Below, in pieces: positions 1-54,779 of a DNA stretch of 64,000 nt. The notes beneath the pieces are model-generated. The model saw nothing but the letters and a program-made list of their open reading frames with translations, was not told the DNA's origin and ran no database searches. The position numbers and the translations under genes were made by a program. This stretch comes from Octopus bimaculoides (lineage: Eukaryota): NCBI RefSeq assembly GCF_001194135.2, contig NC_068984.1, positions 130,479,744-130,543,743 of the forward strand, read 5' to 3'. The stretch's first letter is position 1. Each line of letters begins with the position of its first letter.

Positions 1-2507
1 TGATCTCATAACATAAAGAGTTAGAAAAACTACTGCAAAGCATTTTGTCCAACACTAAAGATTTTTCCAATCCACTACCTGAAATCATAGTAATGTAAGA
101 CCATCTTTGTCACATAGAAGCTGAATCTTTTTGCACCTACAAAGTAATTTACAGCTAACTGAACGATTTTGTACATTTCCACTTGCATCAGATAATGAAT
201 TCAAACATAGATTTTAGAAGCCAAAATGCATTTTGCATGATCCAGACACAAACACGTTATGAAAAAGAGAAAACTGATGACATCATTTTGTCTAAAAAAG
301 AAAGCAGGATACTCCCATTCATATTTTGAATTTCTGTGTCTTTTTTTTCACTTTTCATTTTGAACCCAAGAAAGACAAACATGCTATCAAAAAATTGGTC
401 AATTCAATAAACAGACTCAATCCCTTATCACGCTCTTCTTATTGCCTATTATTGTTGTTGTGGGGTTCCTTGATTATCCCTAGGGGTCATCCTTTATCAG
501 GAGGACATCTCTATCATCCCCACTCCCTTTTTTTCTAACCTTTATATACTATGTATATTTCCCTTCATTTTCATTCTATAGTATGTATACTCACTCTTAT
601 TTATTTATTTTACCTTTTCATTATATGTAAACCCCTACACTTTATGTCTGTCTTGTACTGTCCCTTCAACCTTTGCATTGATGGCAAATAAATGAAATCA
701 TCATTATTATTATGTAATCTTATGTTTATTGCTTGCTTTCACAGAACAGTAACATAGTTCACTGGGCCTTAAGTATGGGCTGTGGTTTGCTTTTGGTGTT
801 GTTATTTTTACTGTATTAAGAGTGCACTGCATAGGACAAGTGGAGTGTCTAGTAATGCTAGTTTGTCTATGTTATAAATACTTGTTAGTCCTGGGGTTTT
901 GGTCACTTATTTGTCTCTATGCTTTTTGACTAAACCTAAAACACCTATTATCATAGAGATTGTTTCTGTCTTCAGGTTCCATGCAGTTACATAAGCTCTA
1001 TTATTGTGTGTGTGAATATGCTTGCAAGCACCTCTGTGAACAGGTGAGGGACAATAGCTTCAGACAGCCCACTTCTCTCTCTCCCTCTTTAAACATAGGC
1101 TTAGGAGCAGGGGATGCAGGGGTGCAAGTGCACCCCCTAAATTATAATTTTTTTTTGGTAGGGGTTGATGAAAATGCTTAGATTATTCTCCCGAAAAATT
1201 GGGTTTGCATCCCACTAAGCAAATTTCATTCACACACTTATGTCTTAAATATGTATATATATGTATGTATGTGTTTGGTATGTATGTATGTATGTATGTT
1301 TTGTATGTAAGTGTATGTGTGTCTGTCTATTTGTCCAACTGTATGTATATATGTACTTATGTGCACATGCATGTGCATATATATGCATTGAAAAGTAAAT
1401 AAGCAACTGAGATTCAATGACATCCTCTAAAACTATTTCCTGAAATTCTATCTTCTCTAAGATTCCAGTTCAGATTACACTAGACACATATTTATTTCAG
1501 TTATATACCCACCCATGTGTATATACTAAAGCCACAGCTGCCTGCACGAGAAGCATAATGATCAATCAAGCAAACAGTCAATACCACAACCACCACCACC
1601 ACCACTGGTGATGTGATGTGTCTCTGAAAACACACATCTCACATTGAGATATGAAATACTGCTGAAATTGGCAGGAGCATTGCATGTTGAATTCAAATTT
1701 TGGCACAAGGCCAGCAATTTCAAGGAAGCGGGTAAATCAATTATGTCAACCCCAGTGCTCAACTGGGGCTTATTTTATTGACTCCGACAGGATGAAAGGC
1801 AAAGTTGACCTTGATGGCATTTGAACTCTGAGCATTGGATGAAATGTTACTAAGCATTTTTCCCAGTGTGCTAACAATTCTGCCACCTCACTGCCCCAAG
1901 AGCTTTGTATATTAGCAATATGTGAAGTTAACTTGAAAAGGTGAGCCTAAATTGTAGCAGGTTTATAATGTGAAGAATGAGAGACTTCAATAGTTTTAAT
2001 TTCCCAACATATCTACACTCTCTGAGTGGTTGGCATTAGGAAGGGCATCCAGCTGTAGAAACTCTGCCAAATCAGATTGGAGCCTGGTGTAGCCATCTGG
2101 TTTCACCAGTCCTCAGTCAAATCGTCCAACCCATGCTAGCATGGAAAGCGGACGTTAAACGACAATGATGATATACAGGTGCAGGTGTGACTTCCCAACC
2201 ATATGGTTCTGAGTTCAGTTCCACTGCAAGGTACCTTGGGCAAGCATCTTCTATTATATATATAAATTATATATATAAATATCTTTTAAATTAATTTATG
2301 GTAACGGTAAAGGCATGCACATAAAGTTCCTATTTTATTATGCTGGCTACCATCTAATGATACTGACTAGTGAGTCAGTTTTTTTGGGGTTACATCATAG
2401 TTATACCAATATAATGTAGGATAAATATAATAATAACAATGATTCTTGCCAGCTCCTGTCGAATCATCTAAGGCATGTTAGCATGGAAGAAGGTCATTAA
2501 ATGATGA

Positions 2508-2544: not shown

Positions 2545-3109
2545 GCACACTAGCTGTTTGTTAATGTAACCAGATAAACATTTACATGAAGATTGTTATA
2601 AAACAAGAAATACATAATACTGTAAAATTGTAAAAATACAAAAATAAAATGTGAAAACCAGGCTATATTCGAGTTTGATTCACTAACATATTTATCTATA
2701 TGTATAGTTTGTTTATTAGTTTTTACAAATCCCAATTTTATATATATTATTCAGTACTAAAATNNNNNNNNNNNNNNNNNNNNNNNNNNNNNNNNNNNNN
2801 NNNNNNNNNNNNNNNNNNNNNNNNNNNNNNNNNNNNNNNNNNNNNNNNNNNNNNNNNNNNNNNNNNNNNNNNNNNNNNNNNNNNNNNNNNNNNNNNNNNN
2901 NNNNNNNNNNNNNNNNNNNNNNNNNNNNNNNNNNNNNNNNNNNNNNNNNNNNNNNNNNNNNNNNNNNNNNNNNNNNNNNNNNNNNNNNNNNNNNNNNNNN
3001 NNNNNNNNNNNNNNNNNNNNNNNNNNNNNNNNNNNNNNNNNNNNNNNNNNNNNNNNNNNNNNNNNNNNNNNNNNNNNNNNNNNNNNNNNNNNNNNNNNNN
3101 NNNNNNNNN

Positions 3110-6618: not shown

Positions 6619-9016
6619 CATTGATGTGACAGCATAGATGACAGGTTTAAATGATGTTCCAGAAAACTTTGAGAACAACACAAACCTCTAAAATTTGCAT
6701 TATTTTTTTTATCTGACCCATCATATCAAGATTGTTGTTGTTGATGATCATGATGATGCTGATGGTGCTGTTGAGGATGAGGATATCCATCAAAATCTAA
6801 GCAAGGCCAACTATCACACTTCAGGTGGGGAATAAGAAAATGTGAGAGGAAACTAGCAATGATCTACATTGGCACAAAAACCAGTTGAAATTCATAAAAC
6901 ACATTATGGTCATGTGCTGTGAAGGAGAGGGTAGTTCTGATGTTTCACATAAGGACCTTTTATGAATGCATCTTCAGAGGTGCAGGCATGGCAGTTGTGC
7001 TTAAGAAGTTTGACTTGCAGCAATATGGTTTCAGGTTCACTCCCACAGCACACCATCTTGGGCATCTGTCTTCTACTACAACAAGCCTGAGGCTAACCAA
7101 TGCTTTGTGATTGAATGTGGTGGATGGAAACTGTCTGGAAGCTCATTATGTGTGTGTGTGTACTGATGGCTTAACTGGCTGAAACTTCAAAGTCACTGTC
7201 AACAATATTCTTGATTGAGAATAAACTTGTACTCTACAAAAGTATGGAGTAGCCCTTCAGACTAATGTATACTAAACATAAAAATAAACACCAAACCATC
7301 AAGTGTCTCAGTCCCATCATCCCCTCTGTGAGTCCCAGCATCAGTAGATCGATTCTCACCACTTCATCTTGGGTCTACCCCTTCCACATGTTCCCTCTAC
7401 AATTAGAGATTGGCACCTCTTGATGCAACTATCTTCATTCATATGCATTACATGGCCATACCAGTGCAGTTTTCTCTCTTGCACACTACATCTGATGCTA
7501 TCTATACCCAGTTTTTCTCACTTCTCTTGCCTGGGTTTCAGCAACAAAGACTGCTGCTTCTTTTGGATTTTGGTTCAAAGTATAATGGTTTCAAACTTTG
7601 GCACAAGGCTGCTAATTTTATGGGGAGGGGAGATGCTAATTACATAAATCTCAGTGCTCAGCTGGTACTTATTTTATCGATTCTGAAAATATGAAAGGGA
7701 AAACCAACTGTGATGGAATTTGAACTCGGAATAGAAAGAACTGGAAGAAATGCTGCCAGCTCACCACTTCGTTTCCTCTAAATTCATTTGCTGTCTCTAT
7801 CAATCTTCAAACATATCCATCCATTAGCAACTGTTCAGCTATCTCTCTCCTTGCATTGAGCACATCTATCTTACGCCACCCTTTTCTGAAGTCACTTTCC
7901 TCAATGTTCACAACTCTTGTAGGCTCTCATACTCCTATGGCATAAAAACTGCAGAAACAGAATCCAAATTTTTATTTGATGCCATTTTAAACTTTCTGCA
8001 ACATTTAGTATTTTTACTCCTTATATATCATTGACATTTCAAACCCTCTTCACTTATTTCTTACAACTAAACCTAACCCTTATCCACACATTATGGGTTC
8101 TTTACTCATTAAATCATTTGATCATTGACCAATCAAATGAAACACACCTCACACTTTACCAGACTCCAGCCTTAAACCCTCTGGTACCAAATCAGCTAAC
8201 TTGGCTGGAGTTTTGTGAGTTTTAGCTGACTACTTTGGGCAGCAAATAGGAACCACCTATAAATCCAACAGAGAGCTAAGTTAGACCATTTTTGTTGCTC
8301 CAGGAAAATTTCTTCATGCCAAAAGGGTTAAAAAGGAATGATGAAACCTGGCTGGAGAGGTGACACATGGGTTTGAAATAGGTGCCTGGTTGCCTTTGTG
8401 GAAACTCAACCTGCATGATTCCACAATTTGAATGGTGCTGATGATTTTGAAAGGAACCTAAGACTGAATAGATCAGTTGGTCCAGTAGTCAGGGCCTATT
8501 ATCACTGAGGGGCTGGTGTGCTGTAAAGCTTCGAAACTGTACATTCTTTCTTGATGATCCCTAAAACCCACTGGTCTCTGTTTAAGTAAGCTGTTTCCAA
8601 GTCTCTTATACACACACACACATATATATACACTCAAGGGTCAGCAATGAACAGAGTACCTCCAGATATGGGTTAAAGAAATAAACAATTATACAAATAA
8701 ACAAAACAAATATAGATATAATTAATAAAAAAAAATCAAATGAATATGTCAAAAACCAAATAAAAATGTAACAAAACAAACAAGAAAAATTTTAATAATT
8801 GCAAAAAATAAAAAAGAGAAAAACCTTCAACAACAAATTATGCATAAAGCAAAGGATAAAAGCGGCTTATTGCTGTTGTTGTTGTTGTTGTTGGCGGTGA
8901 TGATAATTATGATGATGCAGTGGTTGTTATTGATGCTGTTGTTGCTATGAGGGTGAGAGGATGATTGGTGAAACATACAGTGTGGTGGTAAGATGGCACA
9001 GGGGGGAAAAACTTAC

Positions 9017-9037
9017 CTCCCGTATGAATATCTTTGT
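9017..9037 (-). CDS. ASAP: 21-nt microexon B (DKDIHTG)
   Basis: ctcttttcattttctgccctcag|ACAAAGATATTCATACGGGAG|gtaagt; phase 1-1, open; 14/21 nt identical to microexon A with the same acceptor. Confidence 0.68.
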
Positions 9038-12000
9038 CTGAGGGCAGAAAATGAAAAGAGTACAGGGTAAGATACAAAGTAAGTTATCAAAGAAATGCTA
9101 CAAGAAGAAGAAGAAGAAAAAGGCAAAAAAATTATAAAAAAAAACAGAGAAAACAACAAAAATAATTCAACCTGCAAAAATGGATGATGAATTTCATCAG
9201 TTTAACATTAGACGAAATAACAGAATGCAAATTTCAGAAGACAGACATATTTGCAATGAAACTGAAAGAGTTTTATATACGTGGAAGTCAGCCTGAACTA
9301 TGGAGAGAGAGAGACAGCCATTTACAGACAAGACTTAACGAAAGAAAAGCTATGCTGAAGAAATTTTTTTTGTCATTGCATGCAAATCTTCTATGTGATA
9401 ATGTGAAGAATTAGCCAAAACCAAAATATTAATACTATCCACTCAAACTAAATTGCCAAACCCTCATACGTTGTCTAACGACAGGAGAGTCCATCATATA
9501 TATACACACACACACATAGTGTAAGCGTGTACAAATCTATGTTTCTCAATGTAACAGAATCTGTGATAATCTATTATTATAGCTCCTTGGTATATACAAA
9601 TGTTTATTTTTGTCTGTAGTTCAAACTCTTGTTCTGTGAATTCACTAGCATAAGTTTAACATAGCTGTATTCCATTACAGGTAGAGAGATTTGAACTGAA
9701 TAGGATTGGAACCATTTCTTCCACATTGTTAATTTAATAAGTCTCAGTTGCTGGAGTGTCTAAAAATGTTTTATATTTTTACAGTATCGAGTGTGGTATG
9801 AGATCTGTTCAGTTTGGCAAGTATGTGAATCAATATTCGAAGAGCAAAAACAGAAAAAAAAAAAAAAAAAAAAAAAAAAAATTCATAAACATGTATATTC
9901 ATAGCAAAAGGAACACATATCTAGATATACCTAGCAACTTAATAATATATATATATATAACCTTTGAAAGGTATGAATTATTTAATTATGTAGCATAAAT
10001 AAATTCACAAACAGAATGAAGTTGGTACAAAAGTCTTGGCATTTCTTTCACTTCTTTGTAGTTTAGACATTTTTTTTTATTTGTATAGCATCCATTTCAA
10101 ATATATCACAATATTGTTACCTTCAAAATCATCAGTGATGGAGAGAAGATTCACATACCAATACAACTGAGGTGGAAATCAAATTTAGCATTCTAAATTC
10201 ATACAAGACCAAACAAAGTAAACAAAAGGCCATGATGACTGAGATAGTTATTTCAAAATCATATAATATTATTTATCTCTAGAATAGACAGAAAGCTTTC
10301 ATTTTGTTGGTGGTGGTGGTGGGGAGAGATAAAGATGTAAAGTTGATTAAATTAATTCCAGTATGAACTGGTCCTTATTTGCGTTAATTGAATGTGCAAT
10401 TTCTTTATATATTATGCAATGACAAAAAAAAAAAAAATTAAACAACACAAGAGGGACAAATTTTAACAAATGTTATATCAGTCTATCACTTAAAAGGAAA
10501 GGAAAGTGTTTTGATGTTTTGAACACTAGTCCTTCACCAGGAGAGATAAAAGAATGACTAAAATATAAAGGAGAAAAAGTGATAGGAAAGAAAACGTTTC
10601 GGAGGCAGGTGGGAATGTGGTTCTATGGAATGGTAATTGGGAATAGAGTGTATTTTTTTTCATGGATAATGTTCTGAAGAATACTCTAATTCTTCCACTT
10701 CACTTTCTATCTAAATCCTTAGAAACTTTTCCTTCTGACTATTTGAGGCTTCAGTATATTAAATTCTCCGTTTGTGAAGGAGAGAAATCAGAACCAGCAG
10801 TGTGTATGCTAAGAACTGAGTGATAAAGTTGCTACAATGAGGAGAACAAGAACTAACAAGACTTTTGCAACGACTCACATGCATGCATATATACATATAT
10901 ATACATACATATATACAACCTGAAAAGATTAAGGTCTGAGTAAATGAACAATGAACAGTTATTAGGAAAAAAAAAGAATTACTTCAGTTATAGTAAAACA
11001 TCTGGGTTGTTTCCTTAAGAAGAGAGAAATGGGGACAAAACAAAAAACAAAAACAAAATAAATTTCTAACTAAATAACATCCATGGCTAATTCATACAAG
11101 CATATTAACCCTTTTGAAAGCCACCTTCCCAAGACTGCCTTTGGATCTACGATACAAAATCCCCCTTGTTTTAATATTTAATATAAATCCTCTGACCATC
11201 ATTTTACATATGAAGCTTTTTGTTATGTTCCAAACGCCAGATTAATAATAATAACAAAGTTATTTTACTAAATCCCTTCAAATTCTTGTAATTAAAAAAA
11301 AAAATTCTCAAGCACATAGGCAGTGTATTTCAATCAAAATATGGCCACGAAAGGGTTAAATGTTTACAATATCAATGTAGTACAACTGTGACAGACAAGC
11401 CAACAAAAGAGAACATCTAAATTCTACAAAAACCCTTGGCCATTTCAATAAAGCTGGCTACCGAATGTCCATTAATAAATTAATAAACAGCCAATAAACA
11501 TTCCCAGATAATTTGGTGCCTATTCTCACCTGATGGTTCATGAAACTGAAGTTATGTAGAATAGAGTCTTCTGCCCCAGAAACTCAATGAAACTACTATA
11601 GCAAATTTGAACTTATGAAATCTACTCTGTCATAATGGCAGAAATATGAAAACTCATCTAGCAATACCAGCCTAAGATGGACTAGTGACTACCATAGCTT
11701 TAGTGAAATATCTTGGTAATTTCTAAAAGGTTAGGCAAGTTGTTGTATCCACAAATGTAACACAGAAAGCAGTAGATTAACGTAAAAAGGAAAATGTGTC
11801 AACATATGCAGTCAATACACACAGTTCTATATCGACTGTATTTGGCAACAGATAGTTTTCTTTATGCCAGCCAATACAAACAGCCAATGAGGGAACCACA
11901 ATGTGGTAGCTAGAAATAACAACCAAATGTCCATCAAATCACAGCCTAAAGAAGAAAACATTGGACAATATAATATCTGATATACAAAATGATGGATCGG

Positions 12001-14483
12001 CCACAGCTACAGCATTTTTTACCATAAGTCTGTTTGATCAAGAGATGATCCAGAACTAAACAACAAGAACCTAAAGCATAGACAGGCATTAGTCCTATAA
12101 ACAATTAACCTATGTATCTGTGTTGTGCTTATATGGTCAACCAGCTTATTATGTATTTGTTGTATTTACAACAATTACAGTAAGTTCGCAACAGTAGATG
12201 AGAAAGGTTAAAAGTTCAGACATCTCTTGTATCTGAATATCATAGTTTACCAGAGTTATTCTGGCAGTTCACTATAAAATTGTCCCTGATATTGAACTGG
12301 TAGTCACCTCAAATAGTCCTGACCATGTGCTACCATGCAAAATGCATGCAATTTGATAACAACATAAACATAGCAATAAAATTACAGACTGGGCAGATAA
12401 ATACAATGTGCAAATGTTGACCAGATGCATTTACATATTAATGATAAGATACAATAAAATACAACATTATTCCAACTACAAAAGACACATCACATTATTC
12501 AGTATATATTTGTGGCATCTGAATTCTCTTTGCAATTCTGCAGCTCCTAAATGGAATGGAGGTAATACTTCACATTTCTGTGAGGATCAACATGATTTGG
12601 TAGTATTGGTAATATGGGAGGCGATTGAAATTAATGACACATGTCAAAGGAGCTAACAAATTCTTCAGTTTCTCCAACAAGATTAAGTCACCAAACACAA
12701 GCCCTTACTTTTTTCACTGTTTGCAATGCAATCAGTTATGTCATGAGTTGTAGAAAGAACTTTTGTATGATAAACTTAAGGGATAAGTAGCATATTTTTT
12801 ATTAAAGATAAAACCATTCTCTGCTATCATTTCAGATGAAAGTCTGGCAAATTGTCATTCTTGAAAAGTTTGTTGAAGTTATTTTTTTTTTCAGTAATGG
12901 AATTCTTTAAGTGAACATAAATGGTCCATGGATTTAAAGGATCACCAGTGTTTTAATTGTTTAAGTTTTATCAATAATTAATTAATTAATCATGTCAGAA
13001 TGTAATAATAAATTATAAAGAACATTGTCTCAAACTGATCTGCATCATATTTGAGTTTAGTAAAAGCATCAACATGAGGGATGGTCTTTATCAGGAATGT
13101 GAATGATCTTGAAATCATACGATAATAATATGAGCATCCACCAGGTAATCTGTTGAAAAGCTCACTTGGAAATATCAAGACTCTTTGAAAAATGTTAATT
13201 ACAAATTTCGCTTAGAAACATGAAAATCATTGAAAAAATTTTAATTGTAAATATTAATGAACAATATTCAATATCAAAGATTTCTTTAAAAGAAACTGCT
13301 TCAATCTTTCTACACAATCTACCACTGTACAGGCCTTATGTTTGTTATTGTTCCAGCATTATCAATTGTATAACTAACACATGCTATGGACTTTCCTTTT
13401 CAAGACATTATTCCTACTTTTGCAAATTCAGAAGAATCAACAGTGAGAGTGGTTTCTTACTTGGCAGACAATGTTGCCTAAACAGGGTATTGCACAAGAA
13501 GTTCTTTTGTTTTGTTAAAGACCTGTTTCTGATGCAGATGTCCCAAATAGAGATAGTCCTTTTTTGCTACGAGATAAGCCTCAACTATGTCTGCAAATTT
13601 TAGTATAAACTAGTAATAATAATAATCAATCAACTCTGAACATTTTTCAATTTATTCTTTTGATTTAGTTATACTAATTCATTGAATCATAATTATTAGA
13701 TTAAACGATGGTTCAATTCCAACCTTTGAAATATTCATTTATAAGAAATCTATGTAAGATACACAAATAATGCATTTATTTGGGTTAATCAATACAGTGG
13801 CTCCTTTCTGTCTTGCAATGACTGCATTTTATTGATTCTTTAGTTTATTCTGGGCTACTACAAAAACGAGTCTGTCATTCTGATATAAAATCATGCCAAT
13901 AATTTCCTCCAATATCGACTCCATACAATGTTGGAAAAGAAAGCTGATGTTTTGAAACCCAGGAGAAGCTGATATGTATATATAAATTGCTGGAAAGGAC
14001 ACAATCTTTCATTTTGCAACTATAGTATATTACTGGTTCACAAGTCATTATCGTGTCTTATCTTGTGTTAGCAATGCAATATTTTCACTTAATAGATTTT
14101 CTAAAGAATTTAGAGCACTTACAGTGCTGGCTCTGAATTCTATAAACTTACTAGTGAAAGGCTATTTATTAAGCAAAGACAATTGCTTAATAAATATTTT
14201 CACACACTATTTCTTAGCCTTCATCTCAAACCAATTTGCCAATACACATACTTTAAATCATTTGAGAGGTAAAACTTTGCTTCTTACATATCAGTGAACA
14301 TTGTTTTAAAATGAGGATTAAAATGGGAAAATGTTCCAAGATCAAATCCTCATTCTGACTACACCGTTGCAACAAAGCTAACCATGTCTGAGATGGACAT
14401 TTTAGGTAAAATTCTTAAACAATTTAAGGGAAATGAATTTTGTAATCAGCTCACTTTTTTAATTTACCAGCTTTCTTCAACAT

Positions 14484-14743
14484 CAGTGGTTCTCAACAAT
14501 TTTTTTTACCTATGGACCCCCCTTTGATTCCTATTTTACTTGGATAGACCTTTATAGCCTTTCAATGTTTAAAAAAATCCTGTTAAATTTTTATAATTAG
14601 ATTTTAGTAGGATTTGTATTAAAAAAATTGTTAAAATATTTTGTGTATTGTAGAAGTCTAACCAATTTATTGCAGATAAATTTTAACAACAAAATCTTAT
14701 CTAGATTCCCAAGGGCCAAATGAACCCCAGTTGAGAACCACTA
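14484..14743. mobile_element. hAT/Charlie-like MITE
   Basis: TIRs CAGTGGTTCTCAAC / GTTGAGAACCACT; degenerate 8-bp TSD ttcaacat/ttctacac; truncated relative at about 54500-54600. Confidence 0.75.
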
Positions 14744-17259
14744 TTCTACACCAAAACAATTGGCAGTGAATTAATGATACCTTCATTTAGGACATGAAGA
14801 CATAATTCCCATTCCTTGAAGATTTTAAAGCTCATTTCCAACATCATATTTTGTGTGTACTGGGACTGGGTATGCTGGACATAATTTCAACTGTTTACAT
14901 TTACAGGACTGGACCTAGAAAGCTGTGGCGATTCTCAATTGCTATAATTTTAAACCTGATCTCACTCAGTTTACTTGTTGCTTAATCAACTTTCCTTGGC
15001 AAAAATCCTTACTAGTAGCATAAAATATTTCTGTATTAGAACCTAGCTGTACTACTGTTCCAATATTAAATCCTCATTCTGACTACACCATTGCAACAAA
15101 GCTAACCATGTCTGAGATGGACATTTTAGGTAAAATTCTTAAACAGTTTAAGATTCTTTATTTTCATCTGAGTACAACCGATTTCATAAATATAAATCCA
15201 TATTATAAACTCTGATTCTGGATCATTTTTGTTTGTAGAGAACCACAGCAACAAGAATATTAAATGTTAGCTGGAAATCATTAGTTGATTCTCCTGGTTT
15301 TTGCTTTAGGATCAGTTTTTAATCTGTTTAAAGTTATAATTCTCTGATTAAGTTTTGTAATTTTACATTTTCTATTGAATATTTTAAATTGAATAATCTA
15401 AATTTTCAATTGAACAATCTTAAATTATTGTATGGTTGCGTTTAAACCAATTAATGCAAGGGATTTTGAACTAGATGGGGCTTAGTGTTATCTATAGGCA
15501 GTTGTGAGCTACAGATAATTAACCATATATATCACCTTTGGCATTATCAAGACCCAGATGTTTGATTAGATTCCATCTTTATTGTTGTTAGCTGATAATT
15601 AGAGCTGTCATGTTTACGATAATTACCTAAGTCTACAGCAGTAAATTCAAAACATCAAACAGCTGTAATAACTTAGTGTCATAATTCACTAACATTATCC
15701 TCCTCGTTGTACAATATTAAAACTGTTTTTGATATCAAACTAGTAGTCACCTTAAACAGTTTTGGCCATGTGCAAGCATGCAAAACACATGCAACACCAC
15801 AACAAAATTAGCAGAACAATGATATAACAGACCTGTAGATAGACATAGTGTGCAGATACCAAATGGATATGTTTACGTATGAATAACTGAATGCTATAAC
15901 TGTAACAATATAGACTGCTCAAGTAGGGTTAACTGGGAGCTATATATAATCCTGTTTTGTAATAGGATTGACTATTACCATATATGGTATGAAACAAAAC
16001 CCCCCAAACACCAAAACTTAGGCAACACCAATAGTTCCTTCCACTGGCTTAAAATATAAACCTTCATGTATGGGTCATTGCCACAGATGGCTGGGATACT
16101 GTATAATTGTTGAGTGTTTTATAGGCAAGCAATGCTAAGCCTAAAAAGGTTTTGCAATAGAAACCTGAAGAGACAGAACTTCTGAGTTTCAGAAAGCTCA
16201 AATGTGCTACAAATGCCTACTGCTTTTTTTTTTTAATCTGTACCAACCAACATGACTGCCATTCAACATGAAATGCATATTGTGGACAGTTCCACATTTT
16301 CAGGAGTCCAAGGTGTTAAATAATAACAGTAATAACGACTCACCATTGTCGCCATGTATCGTATGCCTTTTGCAGTGCATATCTGACACTACCCTGAAAG
16401 TTTAAATGATTAAGTACAAGTCCTCTCATCAAATGAAGTTACAGCATTACTTTCGTTGAGACTTTCTCATAGTATTTTCTTGGCAGAGATATTGGGCTGG
16501 TTTGCCATTGCCTTCCCCAACTGGATGGGCATTGGCCCACAAGGAGCTCATCTGCCCTTCAGCAGGTCTTGTTTTTAGTCCTGCTGGTTATCCAGACACT
16601 ATCCTCTCATAAGAGTGGCAGGCTATTCAACTGGTGGAGCTGGTTTAGTTGCCGACCACTCAACCATGGAAGAGGAAATACTGGTTTTACATGGTACCAG
16701 TTGCAGGTCTCATCAGCCTGTGATGAGATCCCCGGCTTGACATAAACATTGTCTACTTCTACATAAAAACCTCTTTACACAGTCAACTAACATGCTAAAA
16801 ATAGCAGCTGTTTCTTCCTCGAATCACACCCTAATGTATTAAAAAATGGAATGACACATTGGAGAATGTAGTCATAAATATACAAAAAGACTGTCAATGA
16901 CAGTACAATTAATTAAAATGATAGTTGTGGTTGGAATGCTGACCTGAGGCTAAACCACAACTAACAACTATGACAACTTCTACATACAACCCTCAAGTAG
17001 AGGTAGGCCTCCAATATCCCTACGTTGGATATCTAGAAAATTTTCCCATAAAAGATATCTAAGAAAATCATCAGATCCCAATGATGTTACTGACAGTTCC
17101 TTGTAGAGTTTCTGACCAATCATAAAGACCGGCATGTTGTGGGTTTTAGTCAATGAGGATGAAGGAGAAACACACAGGATTTGAACTTTGCTGTATACAG
17201 ACGTCAATACATCCCTGGCAACTATTGGTGGTAGGTAGCCCTTAGATAATAGTGTGGAA

Positions 17260-17660
17260 AGTAATGATAATGATGTAACGGTGGTGCTGTTGCTGATGCT
17301 GGTGATGGTGCTGCTTCTGATTGTGAACACAATAGTGCAGTTGATTACGATGATGATGATGATGATGATGATAATGATGATGATAATGATAGTGGTGTTG
17401 AAAATGGTAACAATAATGATGATGATGATGATGATAGAAGAATTAATAATGATGATAATGGTGGTGGTGATGATGATGATGATGATGGTAACGCTAGTGA
17501 TAGTGGTAGCCATGCAGGTGTCAATGGCAGTAACTACTAATTAAGGTAATAGTGGAAATATTGGTTACAACGTTGACAGCGATGATGATGATGACGACGA
17601 CAATGATGACGATGATGATGATGATGATAATGGTGATGATGATGATGTTGATGATGATGA
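17260..17660 (+). repeat. (GAT/GGT)n microsatellite tract
   Basis: Direct reading; similar tracts at 38945-39090 and 59180-59580. Confidence 0.95.
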
Positions 17661-17669
17661 CAAACTTAC

Positions 17670-17690
17670 CTTTCACATGAATACCGTTCT
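17670..17690 (-). CDS. ASAP: 21-nt microexon A (ENGIHVK)
   Basis: ttttcttgattttgttttcttgccctcag|AGAACGGTATTCATGTGAAAG|gtaagt; strong sites, phase 1-1, open; paralogous to microexon B. Confidence 0.68.
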
Positions 17691-20600
17691 CTGAGGGCAA
17701 GAAAACAAAATCAAGAAAAAAAAAAAGACAAACAAATGAAGGAAAAAAAAACCCCAAAAAATATTCCTAGAATGATAGCAAAGCTGAGTTTTCCTTTTTT
17801 TTTTTTGAGATGTGGGTGGGGGAATATCTCTGATGTTTGAACTGGCAAATTACTATGACAACAACAGCAACAAAAACAAAAATAAATAAATAAAAAAAAA
17901 AGACCGAACCATACAAAACAGCAAACCGCTACCTAAACATGAACCAGCAAGAAAGGGTCAGTCAAATCTTCAACACGCTCCCTAGGGATCTTTAAAATAG
18001 GGACCACATTAGGTTAGCAGGAAAGAATCAATATATTCAGTTTCTTCCAATCTGTGTAGCAGCCAGATGTTCTTTCAGCAAACTCCTTAGTGACGTTAAT
18101 ATAAAGATTATTAGTTGTCTTTCTGTCTTTTACTTGTTTCAGTCATTGGACTGTGACCATGCTGGGGCACTGCCTTGAAGGGTGCCCCAGCATGGTCACA
18201 GTTGAACATATCAACCCCCATACATGTTTCGTACTTATTCTATTGGCCTCTTTTGCTGAGTTGCAAAGTAATGGGGATGCAAACAAACCAACACAAGCAC
18301 ACACACACATGATGGGTTTCCACAGTTTCCATCTATCAAATTTAATTAGAAGGAAGAGCACCCACTACACTCTCTGAGTGGTTGGCGGTAGGAAGGGCAT
18401 CCAGCTGTAGAAACACTGCCAAATCAGATTGGGGCCTGGTGTAGCCATCTGGTTTCACCAGTCCTCAGTCAAATCGTCCAACCCATGCTAGCATGGAAAG
18501 CGGACGTTAAACGACGATGATGATGATGATGATGATGATTGACCAGAGGCGATAGCAGAAGACATTTGCTTAAGGTGCCATGCAGTAGTACTGAACCTGA
18601 AACCACATGGTTGCACACTCTCACACACACACATCATCACCATCACATATATGACATACACTTATAAACACACAAATATACATAAATATAACCCCACCAC
18701 CCATTCACATACACATTCCAACACACATGCACACACATTTGTGTGATAATGTCCCGGAAAAAGACACTTTTTAAAACCCCCTTTTTTGGGGTACAAACTC
18801 ATCCAAGACGAATCCTGGTTCTGTGATACAAACTCCCCGTTTTAAAGTGATGTAAATTATAACTTTACTTCAAAATTTCATGTCAATTTATGTTACAAAC
18901 AAGAGCTTAATAATGACTAAGTTATTTTAATAAAGTCCTCATTATTTCAAAATTAATTGGACATAGACATTTTATTTCCCTGCTCTTTTGTCTTGCAAGT
19001 TACATTGCAATTTCACTAGAGCTTATGCCATGTAAAAAGCACCTAGTACACTCTGTAAAGTGGTTGGCATTAGAAAGGGCATCCAGCTGTAGAAACCATA
19101 CCAGAGCTGACATTGGAGCTTGATGTGGGCTTGCAGCTTGTGGGATGTGAAACCATCCTACTTATGCTAGCATGAAAAGTGGACTTTAAATTATGATGAT
19201 GATGATGACGACAACAACAAGGAATATTGTTACAAAAGGATTGAGGACATGTTCCAAGACCAAAGTTTCTGCAATGAAACACAAATGGCATCTCATCAGG
19301 TTGGGCCAAACTGGAAGATTTCACCCCACCCACCCAATCAGACCTTGTGAAGTAAGCAAGCCCTGCAGTAGAATCAGAAATCAAAAGAGATGCTTGAAGA
19401 GAAACTCTTAGCACTGAGGATGATTGCTGACCAAGTGTGCTGGAGAACTTTGCCAATGACCTCATGTGTGGAATGCTTTCATGTGTTGGAAGATAGATTC
19501 TAAACCAAATAGTGACAAGTTGCCATCACATCAACAATAGACAAAATGAAAGGAGACTATATGTTGGAAGAAAGTCTGGTCAGAAAAGAGGATACATAGA
19601 CAGAGCAATAAACATACATATATGCATACAGATACACATTCATCAGAGACAAACAATCACTTGCAAAGGAGTCTCTATATCAGTGCTCCACAACTGGTAT
19701 GCCATGGCACACTCGTGCGCAACAAGATAATGCTAGGTGTGCCACAGTGTAACCTGAGCATAACTTTTTTCCCAATACTATCAGCTACATTTTTAGTTCA
19801 GCTGTGCCACCAAATTTTGAAAAGAATATAAATGTACCACAAGTGAAAAAAGGTTGCAGAGCATTGTTCTGTGTCACTATTCAACCTGTTTAGAAATAGA
19901 AGCCAACTCTTCCTCAAATAACAGTGCTGTATACATTATGTTCTAAAAAACAAACAGACAGGATGGTCATAACTGGAATGTCTTTTACTATTGATCTGCT
20001 TGATCAGGATTAACCGGAGAGTTAATCGGAGAGACTACAAAAACAGGCTGTTTACAAATAAATGGGGAAACTAAATAGACAAGAGAAGTATAGGAATGTT
20101 AAAGCATGACCTTTCGGTCAGGTAACAATGGTCCCAACTAGTGGGTCTAATTGGCACTGTGTTGGTTATGATGACGAGGATTCCAGCTGATTCGATTAAC
20201 AGAACAGCCTGCTCATAAAATTAACATGCAAGTAGATGAGTACAGACAACACAGACATGTGTACCCTTAATGTAATTCTCAGGGAGATTCAGTGTGACAC
20301 AGAATGTGACAAAACTGGCCCTTTGAATTACAGACATAATTCATTTTTGCCAGCTGGGTGGACTGGATCAACATGAAATAGAGTGTCTTGCTCAAGGTCA
20401 CAACATGCCAACAGGAATCAAAATCAGGACTCTAAGCCAAATACGCTAACCACTAAGCCACACATCTTCACAACTAGTAGGTGGACTTATCCTAGCATAC
20501 AGGAATGAAAAAAGATGATGATAATGATAATATCAATGATGACTGCTATATTTCAAATCCCAAAGAAGGGAAATATGATGGATTTAATAATTAAGAAACA

Positions 20601-21375: not shown

Positions 21376-23863
21376 NNNNNNNNNNNNNNNNNNNNNNNNN
21401 NNNNNNNNNNNNNNNNNNNNNNNNNNNNNNNNNNNNNNNNNNNNNNNNNNNNNNNNNNNNNNNNNNNNNNNNNNNNNNNNNNNNNNNNNNNNNNNNNNNN
21501 NNNNNNNNNNNNNNNNNNNNNNNNNNNNNNNNNNNNNNNNNNNNNNNNNNNNNNNNNNNNNNNNNNNNNNNNNNNNNNNNNNNNNNNNNNNNNNNNNNNN
21601 NNNNNNNNNNNNNNNNNNNNNNNNNNNNNNNNNNNNNNNNNNNNNNNNNNNNNNNNNNNNNNNNNNNNNNNNNNNNNNNNNNNNNNNNNNNNNNNNNNNN
21701 NNNNNNNNNNNNNNNNNNNNNNNNNNNNNNNNNNNNNNNNNNNNNNNNNNNNNNNNNNNNNNNNNNNNNNNNNNNNNNNNNNNNNNNNNNNNNNNNNNNN
21801 NNNNNNNNNNNNNNNNNNNNNNNNNNNNNNNNNNNNNNNNNNNNNNNNNNNNNNNNNNNNNNNNNNNNNNNNNNNNNNNNNNNNNNNNNNNNNNNNGAGT
21901 TTAAAGAACTAAAAATGGTTATATCTCCTCATGGAACAGTGTCCCTCATTTGGTGAAGAAGAATTTCAAAAACTAACCATCTGCAAAATACTGGAAGTAT
22001 CTTTAAAGAAAAAAAGGCATGAGTATAAAAAAAAAAAAAAAGAATCATGAAAATAAATGAAGATGGTAGAAAAATATTTCTGGAGAAGATTATGAGGAAT
22101 GATGATGCCAAGCAGAAATGGCTAACAGACAAATAAAATGTGTTACAGTGCAGAGACAGGGAGACATGTTGTGCAAAGATAAAACAGTGGATATTCTGAG
22201 ATATAAGATTATAAATAAACATGAAGGATATTCTTTTAAAACAGCTCCATAATATATGGGGTATGGCATATAGTTTAACATTGATATGTGTTGAAGATTT
22301 TTGTTTTTCTAAACTGAAACATATTGTCAATTCTACTGGATACGACATGTAATGTTATGGAGATAAAATACATATGTGAGATAATACATTCTACATTTAA
22401 ACATGTTAAAATAATATGCTATAGAATGTGGGATACAACACAGCATGTGATATCTTCTATTATACAGCTCTACAACATGTGGGATATTCTGTTACACAAC
22501 ACTATACTACATGGAGTATTCTACTTAGACACCGTTTACAATATATATATATATATATATATATAGAACATTCTAGGAAAACTACATGGGTTATTGTTAT
22601 GCAATATCTTACATAGTATATGTATTGTTGTACAACATCAAACATGTGGGATACTCTGTTAAAATACCATCAAAGCATATGAAACATTGTTATACAACAT
22701 TAAACATGTAGGACAATCTTTATTACAGTACTTACAATATAGGGATATATATATTGTTATACAATACTACAACATGTGCATGTAGGCCATTATTTCATAT
22801 ACAACACAATGAGATGAAATACTATTTTACAGGGTGAAAATAAATATGATTTGATACTTTGGAAGAAAGGAGTATAAAAGAGGGGGATATCAGAGAAAGC
22901 AGTGTTATACATAATGATAACTCACTCATAATATTTGAACTTATAACCAGCAGCTTAACTATTCATATATATATTATACATTTGGATGTATAAATGGGAG
23001 AAATTACTCAATGCATGTAGTAGAGTTTATCTATTCATTCACAACTGATGAATCAGAAACACGAATTCTTTATCAGTTTATTCATCATCTTGTCACCTAA
23101 ACGATCAAATGCACAGTGAAAGAAACTTGGGGTTGTGACTGAGCGAATCATTAATTTGAATGAAAAGGATGGGTCTAAATCATCCTGGCAGTAGGCACTC
23201 CAGTGTGTATTTGACTAACAGGGTACTCGGATCAATTTTACCTGTTAACTATTTAAAATGCTTGATGAAACGGTCTGGTTACATGATCATGGAATTGAGT
23301 AGAATAATGAGCAAATTACCATGCTATGGAAATGTACTTTGCATAATTTGAACAACATCTCTATTTATGTTCTTTTATTATATATATATATATGCACCAG
23401 TTCCAATTAGGTTTATTGTAGCCTTCTGCTCAATATTTCGGTGAGTGTATGAGTGTGAAAGTTAGAAATTGCTACCTTCATCTGACCGAAGCTCATCCTG
23501 GATAGAATACAGTAGAACAACCAACTGCTGACTGAAAGAGTCGACATGTCCCTGCACAGCCTTCATGGCTTTGAGTGAGGATATTTGAGAGTAGCTGTGG
23601 CCCATTCAAAACCAAGTTACTGCTGTACATAGTCCTTCTCCAGTAAAGACAGGGCTGGAACTTTTCACTATAAAAATGCAGTGGCATACTGTTTAGAGAT
23701 TTGCACAGGTTTCAATGTCAACTAATTATGTCAGGTAATTTCATTTCAGAGATCAAAAAGAATCATTTTGCTGCTTGAAACAGAAAAGAAGACAAAGAAA
23801 GAAATAGAGAGAGAGAGAGAGGAGAAAAAAAGGAGGATGACACAAAAGAAAGGAAATTCTTAC

Positions 23864-32154: not shown

Positions 32155-32448
32155 CTACAGGAACATGCATGGTATTGCGATTCTCAGGACTGGGTGGTTT
32201 GAACCGTGGAGGTGGCGGGTCTGAAGGCGTACGATAGTGACCCAAGAAAGAGGCATTGGGCTCGGACCAGTTCCTTGTATGGCCAGATGTTGGCGGTGGA
32301 ACAGGGGCTGGTGGCTTCTTTTTGGGCGGCAGTGGAGGCAGACTTGGTCCGCCTGCACCGCTGTGATTATAGCTGTAGGAAGTGGTGTGCAGCAAGGTTC
32401 CGTTGGTCTGTGAAGGTGCCGCTCCACCGATGCTATAGTGATTCAAAC
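32155..32448 (-). CDS. ASAP: ASAP proline-rich exon (LNHYSIGG...PSLPPLPPKKKPPAPVPPP...RTPSDPPPPRFKPPSPENRNTMHVPV)
   Basis: ttgcatcag|...GTAG|gtaagg; 294 nt, phase 1-1; PxxPxK/R motifs typical of the ASAP Pro-rich domain. Confidence 0.88.
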
Positions 32449-33861
32449 CTGATGCAAATAATGCTGATGAGGCAAAATAAACAACATGTCAATACAAGAA
32501 ACTTGCTTTGAGAGAGCAAATTGAGGAGATAGAGGAAGCGAGAGAGAGAAAAAGGGGTAAGGCAGGGAGGGAGGGTGGAAGGGAGATAGAGAGTGAAGGA
32601 GGGAGGGAGAAAGAAAGTGAGACAGGTAGGGACAGAGAAGGAACAATGAAATAAAAAGAGGAGGAGGAGGAGAAAAGAAAGATTGTATAATGAAAGAAAG
32701 GGAAGAGAAAAATACATAGGGAAACACACAGAATATTTACATATGTACCTTAACTTAATTTACATATTTACATCTGTACCTTAACTTAATTTTGCACTGC
32801 TGCAGTCATCAGGCAATTTTATTACTTGATGACAGTTGCAATGTGAAATGCAGAAAAGCAATCCGTGAAGACACAACTGTAAACATGTATTATTTTCACT
32901 TTACCAAGCTGTACAGAGTACTACTTGTGTTCAGGTGTAAAATAATTGTAAGCACCAAAACAGGATTTTGTCAGGGATTGATGATGGCAGTAAGTGACAA
33001 ACCATTCAGGTCCCTGGTGGACACATTAAAAACTTGTTTTTGTTAGTAACTGAGCTGACTGAGCTTAACCCATTAGATACCCAGTTGTAAACAACCTAAC
33101 CTTTTACAGATAAACAACATATTGAAATGTCATTAACAATTTTGTCTTTGGTGTCTTTTCATTGACAGATCACAGCTAATATAGGTAGTTTTGTCTGGTA
33201 ACTAGTGAGTGGTCTGGAATGATTCTATTACTTAAATGTATACACTAATATAAGCATTTTCACTTACATGTATGTTCCATTTTTTAAAATGGTTACATAC
33301 AAAACAGACCATTTGAATTATCTGTACAGCTGAAACCTATGCAATAATAGATGAAGAGTTGACATTATATTGTGTAATAAACACTGTCTATTCTACAACA
33401 CTACTGAGTTTTCTGTGTTTTTTTTCATGTTATCACACACTGATAAACATTACAGTATGTGTGTGTGTGTATACAAGCATAGCTGTGTGGGTAAGAAGCT
33501 TGTTTTGCAACCACATGGTTTCAAGTCCAGCCCCATTGTGTGGCACCTTGAGTAAGTGTCCTCTACTATAGCTTGGACCAACCAATGCTTTGTGAGCAAA
33601 TTTGGTGGACACAAACTGTGTGGAACTGTTTTTGTGTATGTGTGTCTTTGTGTTTCTCCCTCACCATTGCTTGACAACCAGCATTCCTTTTTCTTTTTAT
33701 ATCCCTGTAACTTAGCAGTTTGGCATAGAAACTGATAGAATAAGTATCAGACCTAAAAAGTAAGTACTGGGGTTGATTTGTTCAATTAAAACCCTTCAAG
33801 GCAGTGCCCCAGCATGGCCACAGTACAATGACTGAAATAAAAGATGAAAAAGATAAAAGAC

Positions 33862-46884: not shown

Positions 46885-47316
46885 TTTGACGACTGGCACC
46901 CATGCCAACGTCGTCTCCTTCATTGGAAACGAAACTTGGCTTGCAAAGATCTATTGGGGCAAGCGAAAGCAAAATCATGATGGCACCTGTGCCCAGCATC
47001 ACCTTCCTGGCACTTGTGCCAGATGGCACATGTAAAGATATTCNNNNNNNNNNTGAAATTGTTGCCAGTGCCCCTGGACTGGCTCTTGTGCGGGTGGCAC
47101 ATAAAATACACCATTTTGAGCGTGGCCGTTGCCAGTACCGCCTGACTGGCATATGTGCCGGTGGCACATAAAAGCACCCACTACACTCTCGGAGTGGTTG
47201 GCATTAGGAAGGGCATCCAGCTGTAGAAACTCTGCCAAATCAGATTGGAGCCTAACCCTAACCCTAACCCTAACCCATGCTAACATGGAAAGCGGACGTT
47301 AAACGATGATGATGAT
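46885..47316 (+). mobile_element. Longer copy of the (GAT)n-tailed retroposon, with internal ~60-bp repeat units and a telomeric patch
   Basis: Internal units TTGCCAGTGCCCCTGGACTGGCTCTTGTGCGGGTGGCACAT followed by the family 3' end. Confidence 0.75.
47251..47276 (-). repeat. Interstitial telomeric repeat (TTAGGG)4
   Basis: Plus strand CC(TAACCC)4. Confidence 0.95.
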
Positions 47317-54476: not shown

Positions 54477-54779
54477 ATATGTAGTATAATACAGGCTGGT
54501 GGTTCTCAACCATTTTCACATCCCTTGGATTACTATTTTATTCTAGTGAACCCCATAGCCATTTGATTTTCAAAAACTAGTTTTATAAACACACCTTTCA
54601 AAGTTCCTATTTTGTTTTTCACATGTTTACATCTATCTTTCACTTATTTCCCCTCATTCCATTTGTGTTATTTCACCTGTCAGTATATACGCATACAAGC
54701 TACTAGCACAGGTACTATACACACATACACAACCATACATCCTGCACCAACCAAGTACACATCAGTTGCCACACACAAA

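What the first reader, a model, noticed from the sequence alone, without database searches (positions are those of the whole stretch)
9017..17690. Two paralogous 21-nt microexons in the ASAP C-terminal region, 8.6 kb apart
Seen: 17670-17690 and 9017-9037 have the same length (21 nt) and phase (1-1), the same acceptor (TTTTC[T]TGCCCTCAG) and donor (AG|GTAAGTTT), and 14/21 identical exon bases. They encode ENGIHVK and DKDIHTG (shared IH). The flanking introns are otherwise unrelated. Established: 3-27-nt symmetric microexons with a UGC just upstream of the 3' splice site are the bilaterian neural microexon class, driven by eMIC-domain SRRM proteins. Both carry UGC within 10 nt of the AG. Inference: an old microexon duplication giving a tissue-regulated cassette pair (A, B, both or neither) between the Pro-rich region and the presumed SH3 domain. 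At 8.6 kb apart, any mutual exclusion could not be steric.
Basis: partly seen in the sequence, partly recalled or inferred. Interest (0 to 1): 0.8.

Follow-up and report, generated by a model that had tools for sequence, protein, structure and literature searches.

The report
Twin 21-base microexons in octopus-like ASAP
Two near-identical 21-base units in a long intron of a cephalopod ASAP (Arf-GAP) gene have all the sequence hallmarks of real, frame-preserving microexons that arose by duplication, but whether they are spliced in, and in which tissues, could not be tested here.

Summary
On the minus strand, 17690..17670 (AGAACGGTATTCATGTGAAAG) and 9037..9017 (ACAAAGATATTCATACGGGAG) share 14/21 bases, an acceptor TTTTC(T)TGCCCTCAG and a donor AG|GTAAGTTT. 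Both are open in the phase-1 frame left by the upstream Pro-rich exon (32463..32155). This is far beyond chance. They are the only strong-acceptor/strong-donor pairs 3-60 nt apart on either strand of the 64 kb window (shuffle mean 0.03). They also rank first and second among all phase-compatible exon candidates downstream of the Pro-rich exon. The host gene is an ASAP-family member (PH-ArfGAP-ANK; best PDB matches ASAP2, ASAP3 and ASAP1). Paralogy is supported: exon-body identity has an empirical P of about 7e-4, the acceptor 9-mers are identical, and all 7 differences lie in the exon body with none in 22 splice-signal positions (P=0.004). The sites fit the published eMIC-type layout (UGC at -9..-7, the richest pyrimidine tracts in the gene, 60-76 nt AG-exclusion zones, consensus donors). 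UGC alone is not specific in this gene. Inclusion, alternative use, neural specificity and conservation remain untested, because no cephalopod transcript or orthologous intron was reachable. The SH3 exon is not in the window. The known vertebrate ASAP1/2 microexon lies elsewhere, in the BAR-PH linker.

The parts
17670..17690 (-). Candidate microexon A, 21 nt, phase 1-1. AGAACGGTATTCATGTGAAAG encodes (E)NGIHVK, with the first codon completed by the G of the upstream exon.
   Evidence: Acceptor score 8 and donor score 7.6, both above every constitutive exon of the gene. It ranks 2nd of all phase-compatible candidates.
17691..17705 (-). Acceptor core of A, TTTTCTTGCCCTCAG, with UGC at -9..-7. It sits in a tract that is 86% pyrimidine (-40..-4), with a 76-nt AG-exclusion zone reaching to about 17766.
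17662..17669 (-). Donor of A, AAG|GTAAGTTT. It is close to the U1 consensus.
9017..9037 (-). Candidate microexon B, 21 nt, phase 1-1. ACAAAGATATTCATACGGGAG encodes (D)KDIHTG.
   Evidence: Acceptor score 10 and donor score 7.6. It ranks 1st of all phase-compatible candidates.
9038..9051 (-). Acceptor core of B, TTTTCTGCCCTCAG, with UGC at -9..-7. The tract is 81% pyrimidine, the AG-exclusion zone is 60 nt, and there are CTTAC branch-point candidates at -31 and -43.
9009..9016 (-). Donor of B, GAG|GTAAGTTT. It is identical to the donor of A over +1..+8.
32155..32463 (-). Upstream constitutive Pro-rich exon (309 nt, phase 1-1), ending ...HVPV + G. It sets the reading phase for A and B.
   Evidence: (boundaries conserved in L001 from another cephalopod).
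17520..17669 (-). YCAY-rich (CAT/ATC)n tract immediately downstream of A: 21 YCAY in 150 nt, the 99th percentile of the window. It may be a regulatory cluster, a relic of the duplicated unit, or an ordinary microsatellite.
8867..9016 (-). YCAY-rich stretch immediately downstream of B: 12 YCAY in 150 nt, the 97.5th percentile.

Best explanation
The two 21-mers are genuine exons of the ASAP gene. Each adds seven residues (ENGIHVK and/or DKDIHTG) to the disordered stretch that follows the Pro-rich region. They are paralogues derived from one ancestral microexon by an intragenic duplication. Since then the neighbouring intron sequence has diverged beyond alignment. Both copies have kept identical splice signals, the same length, the same phase and an open frame.

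Each unit is 21 nt, enters in phase 1 and ends in G. So any combination (neither, A, B, A+B) stays in frame and leaves the next codon unchanged. The most likely mode of use is as independent cassette microexons. A 21-nt exon is too short for ordinary exon definition. Recognition would therefore rest on the near-consensus 5' splice site, the long pyrimidine tract set back from the AG, and a UGC element between branch point and AG. That layout is the one bound by eMIC-domain SRRM proteins, and it predicts neuron-enriched inclusion.

Shown: the sequence anatomy, its statistical exceptionality, host-gene identity and the fit to the published cis layout.
Inferred: that the exons are spliced in, that they arose by duplication, that they are used as cassettes, and that inclusion is neural and SRRM-dependent.
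For: - Only two strong 3'ss/5'ss pairs 3-60 nt apart exist in 128 kb of searched strand. Both lie on the coding strand, in the correct intron, are 21 nt long and are open in the required phase (shuffle mean 0.03).
- Phase 1 with a terminal G is confirmed at the upstream exon.
- Host gene: PH+ArfGap+Ank, with ASAP2/3/1 as the best solved-structure matches.
- Paralogy: 14/21 identity has an empirical P of 7e-4. The last 9 acceptor nt are identical, which happens in 5 of 595 pairs of equally strong acceptor-like sites, 3 of them from a repeat. Only these 2 of 35 such sites have TGC at -9..-7.
- Selection signature: 7/21 differences in the exon body against 0/22 in the splice signals, Fisher P=0.0036, while the flanks are unalignable.
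- The core is not part of a dispersed repeat.
- The cis layout matches published eMIC-exon features: UGC near the 3'ss, a long Py tract, a long AG-exclusion zone, and a consensus-like 5'ss in mammals (PMC8797185; bioRxiv 10.1101/2024.09.17.613571).
- ASAP1 and ASAP2 are established hosts of neural eMIC-dependent microexons in vertebrates (PMC12626424 supplement).
Against: - There is no transcript evidence of any kind and no orthologous intron from another cephalopod. All searches came back empty.
- UGC also lies within 13 nt of the AG at three constitutive acceptors of the same gene, so it does not discriminate here.
- The splice sites are so strong that constitutive inclusion is a real alternative.
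- All 7 exon differences are non-synonymous and only I-H is shared, so there is no sign of peptide-level constraint between the copies.
- The next downstream exon and the SH3 exon are not in the window, and two assembly gaps (21376-21896, 2764-3109) could hide further exons.
- The splice scores come from a simple home-made scoring scheme, not a trained model.
Confidence: 0.55

Rival explanations
1. They are real exons but constitutive. They would be two tiny obligatory exons that subdivide an intron of more than 32 kb, included in every ASAP transcript with no tissue regulation.
For: Both have the strongest acceptor and donor scores in the gene. Consensus donors and very rich Py tracts favour efficient recognition without a tissue-specific activator. 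UGC is not specific in this gene.
Against: Exons this short are usually poorly defined without an activator. The long AG-exclusion zones and the UGC between branch point and AG fit the regulated class. Mammalian regulated microexons also have consensus-like 5'ss, so strong donors do not separate the two readings.
Confidence: 0.2
2. They are pseudo-exons. The sequences resemble exons by chance or are relics of a dead duplication, and they are never spliced into ASAP mRNA.
For: No expression or conservation evidence could be obtained. Long introns contain many decoy sites.
Against: Shuffles give 0.03 such pairs per window against 2 observed. Both are on the gene strand, in frame, open, of equal length and top-ranked. 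Differences between the copies avoid the splice signals, which is unexpected for decaying relics whose flanks have already diverged beyond alignment.
Confidence: 0.07
3. They are real microexons but not paralogues. Two independently exonised sequences converged on the same splice-signal and enhancer consensus.
For: Acceptor and donor similarity partly reflects consensus. All exon differences are non-synonymous and only two residues are shared. Convergence is hard to exclude for such short sequences, as PMC8553928 notes.
Against: The exon interior still matches at 11/18 positions outside the consensus bases (P=0.0025), with a contiguous TATTCAT at the same offset. Length and phase are identical, as is the unusual TGCCCTCAG 9-mer. 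Only these 2 of 35 strong acceptor-like sites have TGC at -9..-7.
Confidence: 0.1
4. They form a mutually exclusive pair (A or B, never both), like classical tandem-duplicated exon substitution events.
For: They are homologous exons of the same length and phase in one intron, which is the usual origin of mutually exclusive exons (PMC9741552).
Against: None of the known enforcing mechanisms applies. The separation is 8.6 kb, so there is no steric block. Both are multiples of 3, so joint inclusion stays in frame and gives no NMD penalty. No shared selector sequence or complementary docking site was found within 600 nt of either exon.
Confidence: 0.08

Closest known systems
eMIC/SRRM3/4-dependent neural microexons of bilaterians
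   Same: Length of 27 nt or less, a multiple of 3, and an open frame. UGC between branch point and AG, close to the 3'ss. Long, strong pyrimidine tract, long AG-exclusion zone and consensus-like 5'ss. Location in a linker next to protein-interaction regions of a membrane-traffic/GTPase-regulator gene.
   Different: Neural inclusion, SRRM dependence and deep conservation are the functional hallmarks, and none could be tested. The pyrimidine tract runs almost up to the UGC, and no clear alternating UCUC element is present.
Vertebrate ASAP1/ASAP2 neural microexon (HsaEX0006155, HsaEX0006174; zebrafish DreEX0015055/15073/15082)
   Same: Same gene family. A neural, eMIC-responsive microexon in a disordered linker (PMC12626424 supplement).
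   Different: The vertebrate exon is 9 nt and lies in the BAR-PH linker: its RT-PCR primers encode EKKQLTA and QGGYSMH, just upstream of the exon homologous to window 63671-63495. The units here are 21 nt, paired, and lie after the Pro-rich region. If real, they are an independent acquisition in the same family. That would echo the reported lack of shared microexons between fly and mouse orthologues.
Paired neuronal mini-exon cassettes such as agrin z8/z11 and PTPdelta meA/meB (recalled from memory, not checked here)
   Same: Two adjacent very short cassette exons whose combinations (none, one, the other, both) give a small isoform series in a neuronal protein.
   Different: Those pairs are not reported to be sequence paralogues of each other and differ in length. 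Here the two exons have the same length and are clearly related in sequence.
Tandem-duplicated exon substitution (mutually exclusive exons)
   Same: Origin by intragenic exon duplication; same length and phase.
   Different: The exons are microexon-sized, 8.6 kb apart, and compatible with joint inclusion. No mechanism enforcing exclusivity was detected.

Membership tests
eMIC/SRRM-dependent neural microexons | Exon length 3-27 nt, frame-preserving | tested here: met
   Both are 21 nt, phase 1-1 and open.
eMIC/SRRM-dependent neural microexons | UGC motif between branch point and AG, close to the 3'ss | tested here: met
   UGC lies at -9..-7 in both. Specificity is low: UGC also lies within 13 nt at 3 of 9 constitutive acceptors. 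The literature reports it in 74-79% of SRRM3/4 targets and says it is not strictly required.
eMIC/SRRM-dependent neural microexons | Long/strong pyrimidine tract and branch point set back from the AG (long AG-exclusion zone) | tested here: met
   Pyrimidine content is 0.86 and 0.81, the highest of 11 acceptors. AG-exclusion zones are 76 and 60 nt. yUnAy candidates lie at -21/-47 (A) and -31/-43 (B).
eMIC/SRRM-dependent neural microexons | Consensus-like 5' splice site (mammalian type) | tested here: met
   AAG|GTAAGT and GAG|GTAAGT, the highest donor scores in the window. Drosophila eMIC exons have weak 5'ss instead.
eMIC/SRRM-dependent neural microexons | Neuron-enriched inclusion | not testable with these tools
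   No cephalopod RNA-derived sequence was reachable.
eMIC/SRRM-dependent neural microexons | Inclusion depends on an eMIC-domain SRRM protein | not testable with these tools
   Needs a minigene or knock-down experiment.
eMIC/SRRM-dependent neural microexons | Conservation of the exon and flanking intron in related species | tested here: inconclusive
   A degenerate pattern found 0 hits in metagenome, genome and viral collections, and no read-through ORF is in the protein collection. These collections essentially lack cephalopod DNA. The only relative (L001) covers the Pro-rich exon only.
ASAP family Arf-GAP (host gene) | PH - ArfGAP - ankyrin core | tested here: met
   Pfam PH, ArfGap (E=8e-35) and Ank. 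Best PDB hits are ASAP2/PAPbeta 1dcq (3e-63), ASAP3 2b0o/3lvq, and ASAP1 PH 5c6r/2da0.
ASAP family Arf-GAP (host gene) | Pro-rich region after the ANK repeats | tested here: met
   Exons at about 46.6 kb and 32463-32155. The homologous exon was recovered from other animals.
ASAP family Arf-GAP (host gene) | C-terminal SH3 domain | tested here: inconclusive
   No SH3 exon was found in the window by tblastn, using a query validated against PDB 8ze8/2ed1. It must lie beyond window position 1.
ASAP family Arf-GAP (host gene) | N-terminal BAR domain | not tested
   It would lie upstream of the PH exon, outside the window.
Orthologue of the vertebrate ASAP1/2 microexon | Position in the BAR-PH linker; 9 nt | tested here: not met
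   The vertebrate exon maps between EKKQLTA and QGGYSMH. The units here lie 14-23 kb downstream of the Pro-rich exon and are 21 nt.
Mutually exclusive tandem-duplicated exons | Homologous neighbouring exons of equal length and phase | tested here: met
Mutually exclusive tandem-duplicated exons | A mechanism enforcing exclusivity (steric, frame/NMD, or docking-selector RNA pairing) | tested here: not met
   The intron is 8.6 kb. Both exons are multiples of 3. The only non-trivial shared 10-mers are the splice sites themselves, and no complementary docking site exists.
Recursive-splicing (RS) sites/exons | The 3'ss is followed immediately by a regenerated 5'ss (AG|GTRAGT) | tested here: not met
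   The junctions read CAG|AGAACG and CAG|ACAAAG.

The most novel reading that the evidence does not exclude
A microexon was born by intragenic duplication of an existing microexon. This gave cephalopod neurons a four-state (0, 7, 7' or 14 residue) combinatorial insert in the ASAP linker after the Pro-rich region. It was acquired independently of the vertebrate ASAP1/2 microexon in the BAR-PH linker. That would make it a case of parallel recruitment of the same gene family into neural microexon programmes in two large-brained lineages.
Probability: 0.3. Interest if true: 0.55.

Novelty: new member of a known kind. Interest (0 to 1): 0.4.

Why it matters
How microexons originate is still poorly documented. 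A pair of clearly related microexons in one intron would be a concrete example of origin by duplication. The paralogue comparison itself shows which positions are constrained: the splice signals and the length and phase are kept, while the peptide is not. ASAP proteins link Arf GTPase control to actin and adhesion partners through their Pro-rich and SH3 regions. A short regulated insert between those regions is a plausible way to tune such interactions in neurons. It would also add a cephalopod case to the evidence that microexon programmes target the same gene families in parallel in different lineages. If RNA data show that the exons are constitutive, or already present in existing gene models, the finding is an ordinary annotation detail.

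Tried and rejected
1. Exact look-ups of three read-through ORFs from the window in public assemblies found none on record.
2. A codon-degenerate DNA pattern covering both microexons plus splice sites gave 0 hits in metagenome, prokaryote-genome and viral contig collections. These collections hold no cephalopod copy.
3. A protein word search with the read-through contexts of both sites found no candidate.
4. A full HMMER scan with the Pro-rich exon recovered that exon from one cephalopod-like and four more distant animals. None extended into the C-terminal linker.
5. A chimeric query (microexon peptides plus ASAP1 SH3) returned 152 SH3 ORFs, nearly all vertebrate, and none held ENGIH- or DKDIH-like words. 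Three invertebrate-looking loci (L002-L004) have a phase-0 last exon and share no repeats with the window, so they were uninformative.
6. The idea that 'IHTG' in B matches vertebrate '...PRKINTGKNK...' was rejected. The spliced fish/tetrapod ORF P0007 confirms the vertebrate sequence. But the vertebrate intron is in phase 0 with the Gly in the last exon (L005), whereas the octopus IHTG lies wholly inside the microexon and is followed by a phase-1 junction.
7. Transposon or dispersed-repeat origin of the core was rejected.
8. Docking/selector pairing for mutual exclusion was not found.
9. The recursive-splice-site reading was rejected, because no 5'ss is regenerated.
10. A Nova-like YCAY cluster downstream of both exons is statistically enriched. 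I down-weighted it because similar (ATC)n tracts occur at other places in the gene.
11. A literature search for cephalopod microexon tables found no usable exon-level data.

Full report
OBSERVATION. The gene runs on the minus strand. Read in that orientation, site A is ttttcttgccctcag|AGAACGGTATTCATGTGAAAG|gtaagtttgt (exon 17690..17670). Site B is ttttctgccctcag|ACAAAGATATTCATACGGGAG|gtaagttttt (exon 9037..9017). The two 21-mers share 14 bases, including a contiguous TATTCAT at the same offset. The acceptors differ by one T indel. The donors are identical over +1..+8. A 620-nt alignment around each site shows that the similarity stops after a core of about 45 nt; beyond it only poly-T and (ATC)n tracts align.

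HOST GENE AND READING PHASE. tblastn with a recalled mouse ASAP1 sequence, used only as a lead, placed a series of exons on the minus strand from 63.7 kb down to 32.2 kb. A composite of the frame-consistent exons gives Pfam PH, ArfGap (E=8e-35) and Ank. Its best solved-structure matches are ASAP2/PAPbeta (1dcq, 3e-63), ASAP3 (2b0o, 3lvq) and the ASAP1 PH domain (5c6r, 2da0). The last recognisable exon is a 309-nt Pro-rich exon, 32463..32155. Its boundaries are conserved in the one related sequence I could retrieve, L001, a 1.6-kb Logan contig from a distant cephalopod-like genome with about 74% DNA identity in the exon and unalignable introns. That exon ends ...CCT GTA G|gtaagg, so it is in phase 1 with a carried G. 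Both 21-mers are open in exactly that phase: G+AG AAC GGT ATT CAT GTG AAA gives ENGIHVK, and G+AC AAA GAT ATT CAT ACG GGA gives DKDIHTG. Each ends with a G that starts the next codon. Skipping or including either unit, in any combination, therefore keeps the frame and leaves the following codon unchanged. No SH3 exon is in the window. The SH3 query was later validated against PDB ASAP1 SH3 entries. 'Between the Pro-rich region and the SH3 domain' is therefore a reasonable inference, not an observation.

IS IT MORE THAN CHANCE?
- Of 385 AG-N21-GT 21-mers on both strands, only these two have CAG preceded by at least 13/17 pyrimidines and followed by GTRAGT.
- With a simple acceptor/donor scoring, and allowing any exon length from 3 to 60 nt on either strand, they are the only strong pairs in the window. 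One hundred dinucleotide-preserving shuffles give a mean of 0.03 pairs and never two. They remain clear outliers as thresholds are relaxed.
- Among all candidates downstream of the Pro-rich exon that are open in phase 1, they rank first and second. Their acceptor and donor scores exceed those of the gene's own homology-supported exons.
- Two such units on the coding strand, in the right intron, in the right phase and of identical length, are very unlikely to be decoys.

ARE THEY PARALOGUES?
- Exon-body identity of 14/21 or more occurs in 7e-4 of 73,920 random pairs of AG-N21-GT 21-mers from the window. Leaving out the three consensus positions, 11/18 still gives P=0.0025.
- Among 35 equally strong acceptor-like sites in the window, identity over the last 9 nt occurs in 5 of 595 pairs, three of which come from one dispersed repeat. 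Only these two sites have TGC at -9..-7.
- No third copy exists at 3 or fewer mismatches, and the core belongs to no repeat family.
- All seven substitutions between the copies lie in the exon body (7/21). None lies in the 22 aligned splice-signal positions (Fisher P=0.0036), while the surrounding intron is unalignable. This is the pattern expected if both copies have been kept spliceable for a long time.
- All seven substitutions are non-synonymous and only Ile-His is shared. The constraint visible between the copies is therefore on splicing, length and phase, not on the peptide.
- Convergence cannot be excluded for sequences this short, but common origin is the simpler reading.

HOW IT MOST LIKELY WORKS. 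A 21-nt exon cannot be defined in the usual way. Published work describes the compensating layout of SRRM3/4 (eMIC)-dependent microexons as follows: a UGC close to the 3'ss between branch point and AG, long pyrimidine tracts, long AG-exclusion zones and strong branch points, and in mammals consensus-like 5'ss (PMC8797185; bioRxiv 10.1101/2024.09.17.613571). Both sites fit this layout.
- UGC lies at -9..-7.
- Pyrimidine content over -40..-4 is 0.86 and 0.81, the highest of eleven acceptors in the gene.
- AG-exclusion zones are 76 and 60 nt.
- yUnAy branch-point candidates lie 21-47 nt upstream.
- The donors are AAG|GTAAGT and GAG|GTAAGT.
One caveat: UGC also lies within 13 nt of the AG at three constitutive acceptors of this gene, so that motif carries little weight alone.
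I looked for the only known long-range mechanism of mutual exclusion, selector and docking RNA pairing, and found none. The only non-trivial 10-mers shared near both exons are the splice sites themselves. The junctions do not regenerate a 5'ss, so these are not recursive splice sites. The best-supported model is two independent cassette microexons, with neural, SRRM-type activation predicted but untested. The main rival is constitutive inclusion, which the very strong splice sites make plausible.

COMPARISON WITH KNOWN CASES. ASAP1 and ASAP2 are established hosts of a neural, eMIC-responsive microexon in vertebrates: HsaEX0006155 and HsaEX0006174, and zebrafish asap1a, asap1b and asap2a (PMC12626424 supplement). 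That exon is 9 nt. From the RT-PCR primers, which encode EKKQLTA and QGGYSMH, it lies in the BAR-PH linker, just upstream of the exon homologous to window 63671-63495. The units here are not its orthologues. If real, they are an independent acquisition in the same family. That would be in line with the report that fly and mouse microexons fall in some of the same genes but are not conserved (summarised in PMC9741552). I found no paper describing paralogous microexon pairs and no published exon-level cephalopod microexon data. A resemblance between 'IHTG' in B and vertebrate 'KINTG' before the SH3 domain was checked and rejected. P0007 confirms the vertebrate sequence, but the vertebrate intron is in phase 0 and at a different codon (L005).

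WHAT COULD NOT BE DONE. The collections available are essentially prokaryotic and metagenomic. Three protein searches, one full HMMER scan, three DNA pattern scans and eight contig look-ups produced no cephalopod transcript and no orthologous copy of the intron. Inclusion, tissue pattern, SRRM dependence and conservation therefore remain open. The splice scoring is my own simple scheme. The conclusions rest on rank and on shuffle controls, not on absolute values.

VERDICT. The reading 'two paralogous, frame-neutral 21-nt exons of ASAP' is well supported by sequence statistics; I put real exons at about 0.8 and common origin at about 0.7. 'Alternative, neural, eMIC-driven cassette pair' is a reasonable prediction that fits the cis layout but is untested; the full statement gets about 0.55. 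It is a new member of a known kind, of moderate interest. It is cheaply testable by counting three junction k-mers in existing octopus RNA-seq data.

Noticed in passing
window 17520-17669 and 8867-9016 (minus strand): The 150 nt of intron immediately downstream of both candidate microexons is rich in YCAY, the Nova/Pasilla-type motif: 21 and 12 copies, against a window mean of 3.2 (99th and 97.5th percentiles). Much of it is (ATC/CAT)n, which also occurs at about 38.9 kb, 48.3 kb and 59.4 kb.
   Followed up: partly
window 32449-32464 (minus strand): The Pro-rich exon has two in-frame CAG acceptors 15 nt apart. The upstream one (TTTTGCCTCATCAG|CA, exon start 32463) is conserved in L001. The downstream one (exon start 32448) is not. 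A possible alternative 3' splice site would remove 5 residues.
   Followed up: partly
window 2764-3109, 21376-21896, 35887-36121, 37718-37966, 39869-40600, 47044-47053, 53465-54154, 55084-55722: There are eight runs of N (assembly gaps), mostly flanked by (TA)n or (GA)n microsatellites. Two lie in the intron space around the microexons and could hide further exons or a third copy. One or two probably hide an ANK exon between 56266 and 52697.
   Followed up: no
window 2013-2172, 18365-18524, 19049-19211, 38486-38650, 45396-45563, 47181-47340, 58229-58395: A dispersed SINE-like repeat family occurs in the introns (repeat finder families D10, D14, D17). The copies at 2013 and 18365 are 97% identical. 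Other families include D11/D13 (about 90 nt, 7-10 copies), D16, and a 233-nt pair at 37452 and 55800 (94%).
   Followed up: no
window 38458-38493 (minus strand): A 36-nt, phase-compatible, open exon-like unit lies between the two Pro exons (acceptor score 7, donor score 6.3). Its acceptor comes from a copy of the dispersed repeat D17, so it is probably a decoy or an exonised repeat.
   Followed up: partly
window 60837-62255 (minus strand): My exon model loses the frame between the second and third PH-domain exons. A small exon, or a different boundary encoding roughly the equivalent of mouse 'PNAEDKKSFDLIS', is unresolved.
   Followed up: no
window 32156-32461 (minus strand); P0001-P0005: The Pro-rich exon carries a motif conserved across distant animals (PPLPPKKKPP...GH.RN.SEP...H.RTPSDPPP). 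A full HMMER scan recovered it in five unrelated assemblies.
   Followed up: partly
L002 (acceptor at 269/270), L003 (2089/2090), L004 (315/316), L005 (about 263/264): In a vertebrate ASAP1 locus and three invertebrate-looking ASAP loci, the last exon (linker plus SH3) begins in phase 0. The octopus microexons leave phase 1. If this gene shares that phase-0 boundary, at least one further exon must lie between microexon B and the SH3 exon.
   Followed up: partly
window 63672-64000 (minus strand): The 330 nt upstream of the first PH exon is where a counterpart of the vertebrate 9-nt ASAP1/2 microexon could start to appear. It shows no exon-like unit, only a C/A-rich low-complexity tract. Any counterpart lies outside the window.
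   Followed up: partly
window 54779-55080: A tandem array of five units of about 60 nt (74-94% identical) abuts an assembly gap inside the ANK-region intron.
   Followed up: no
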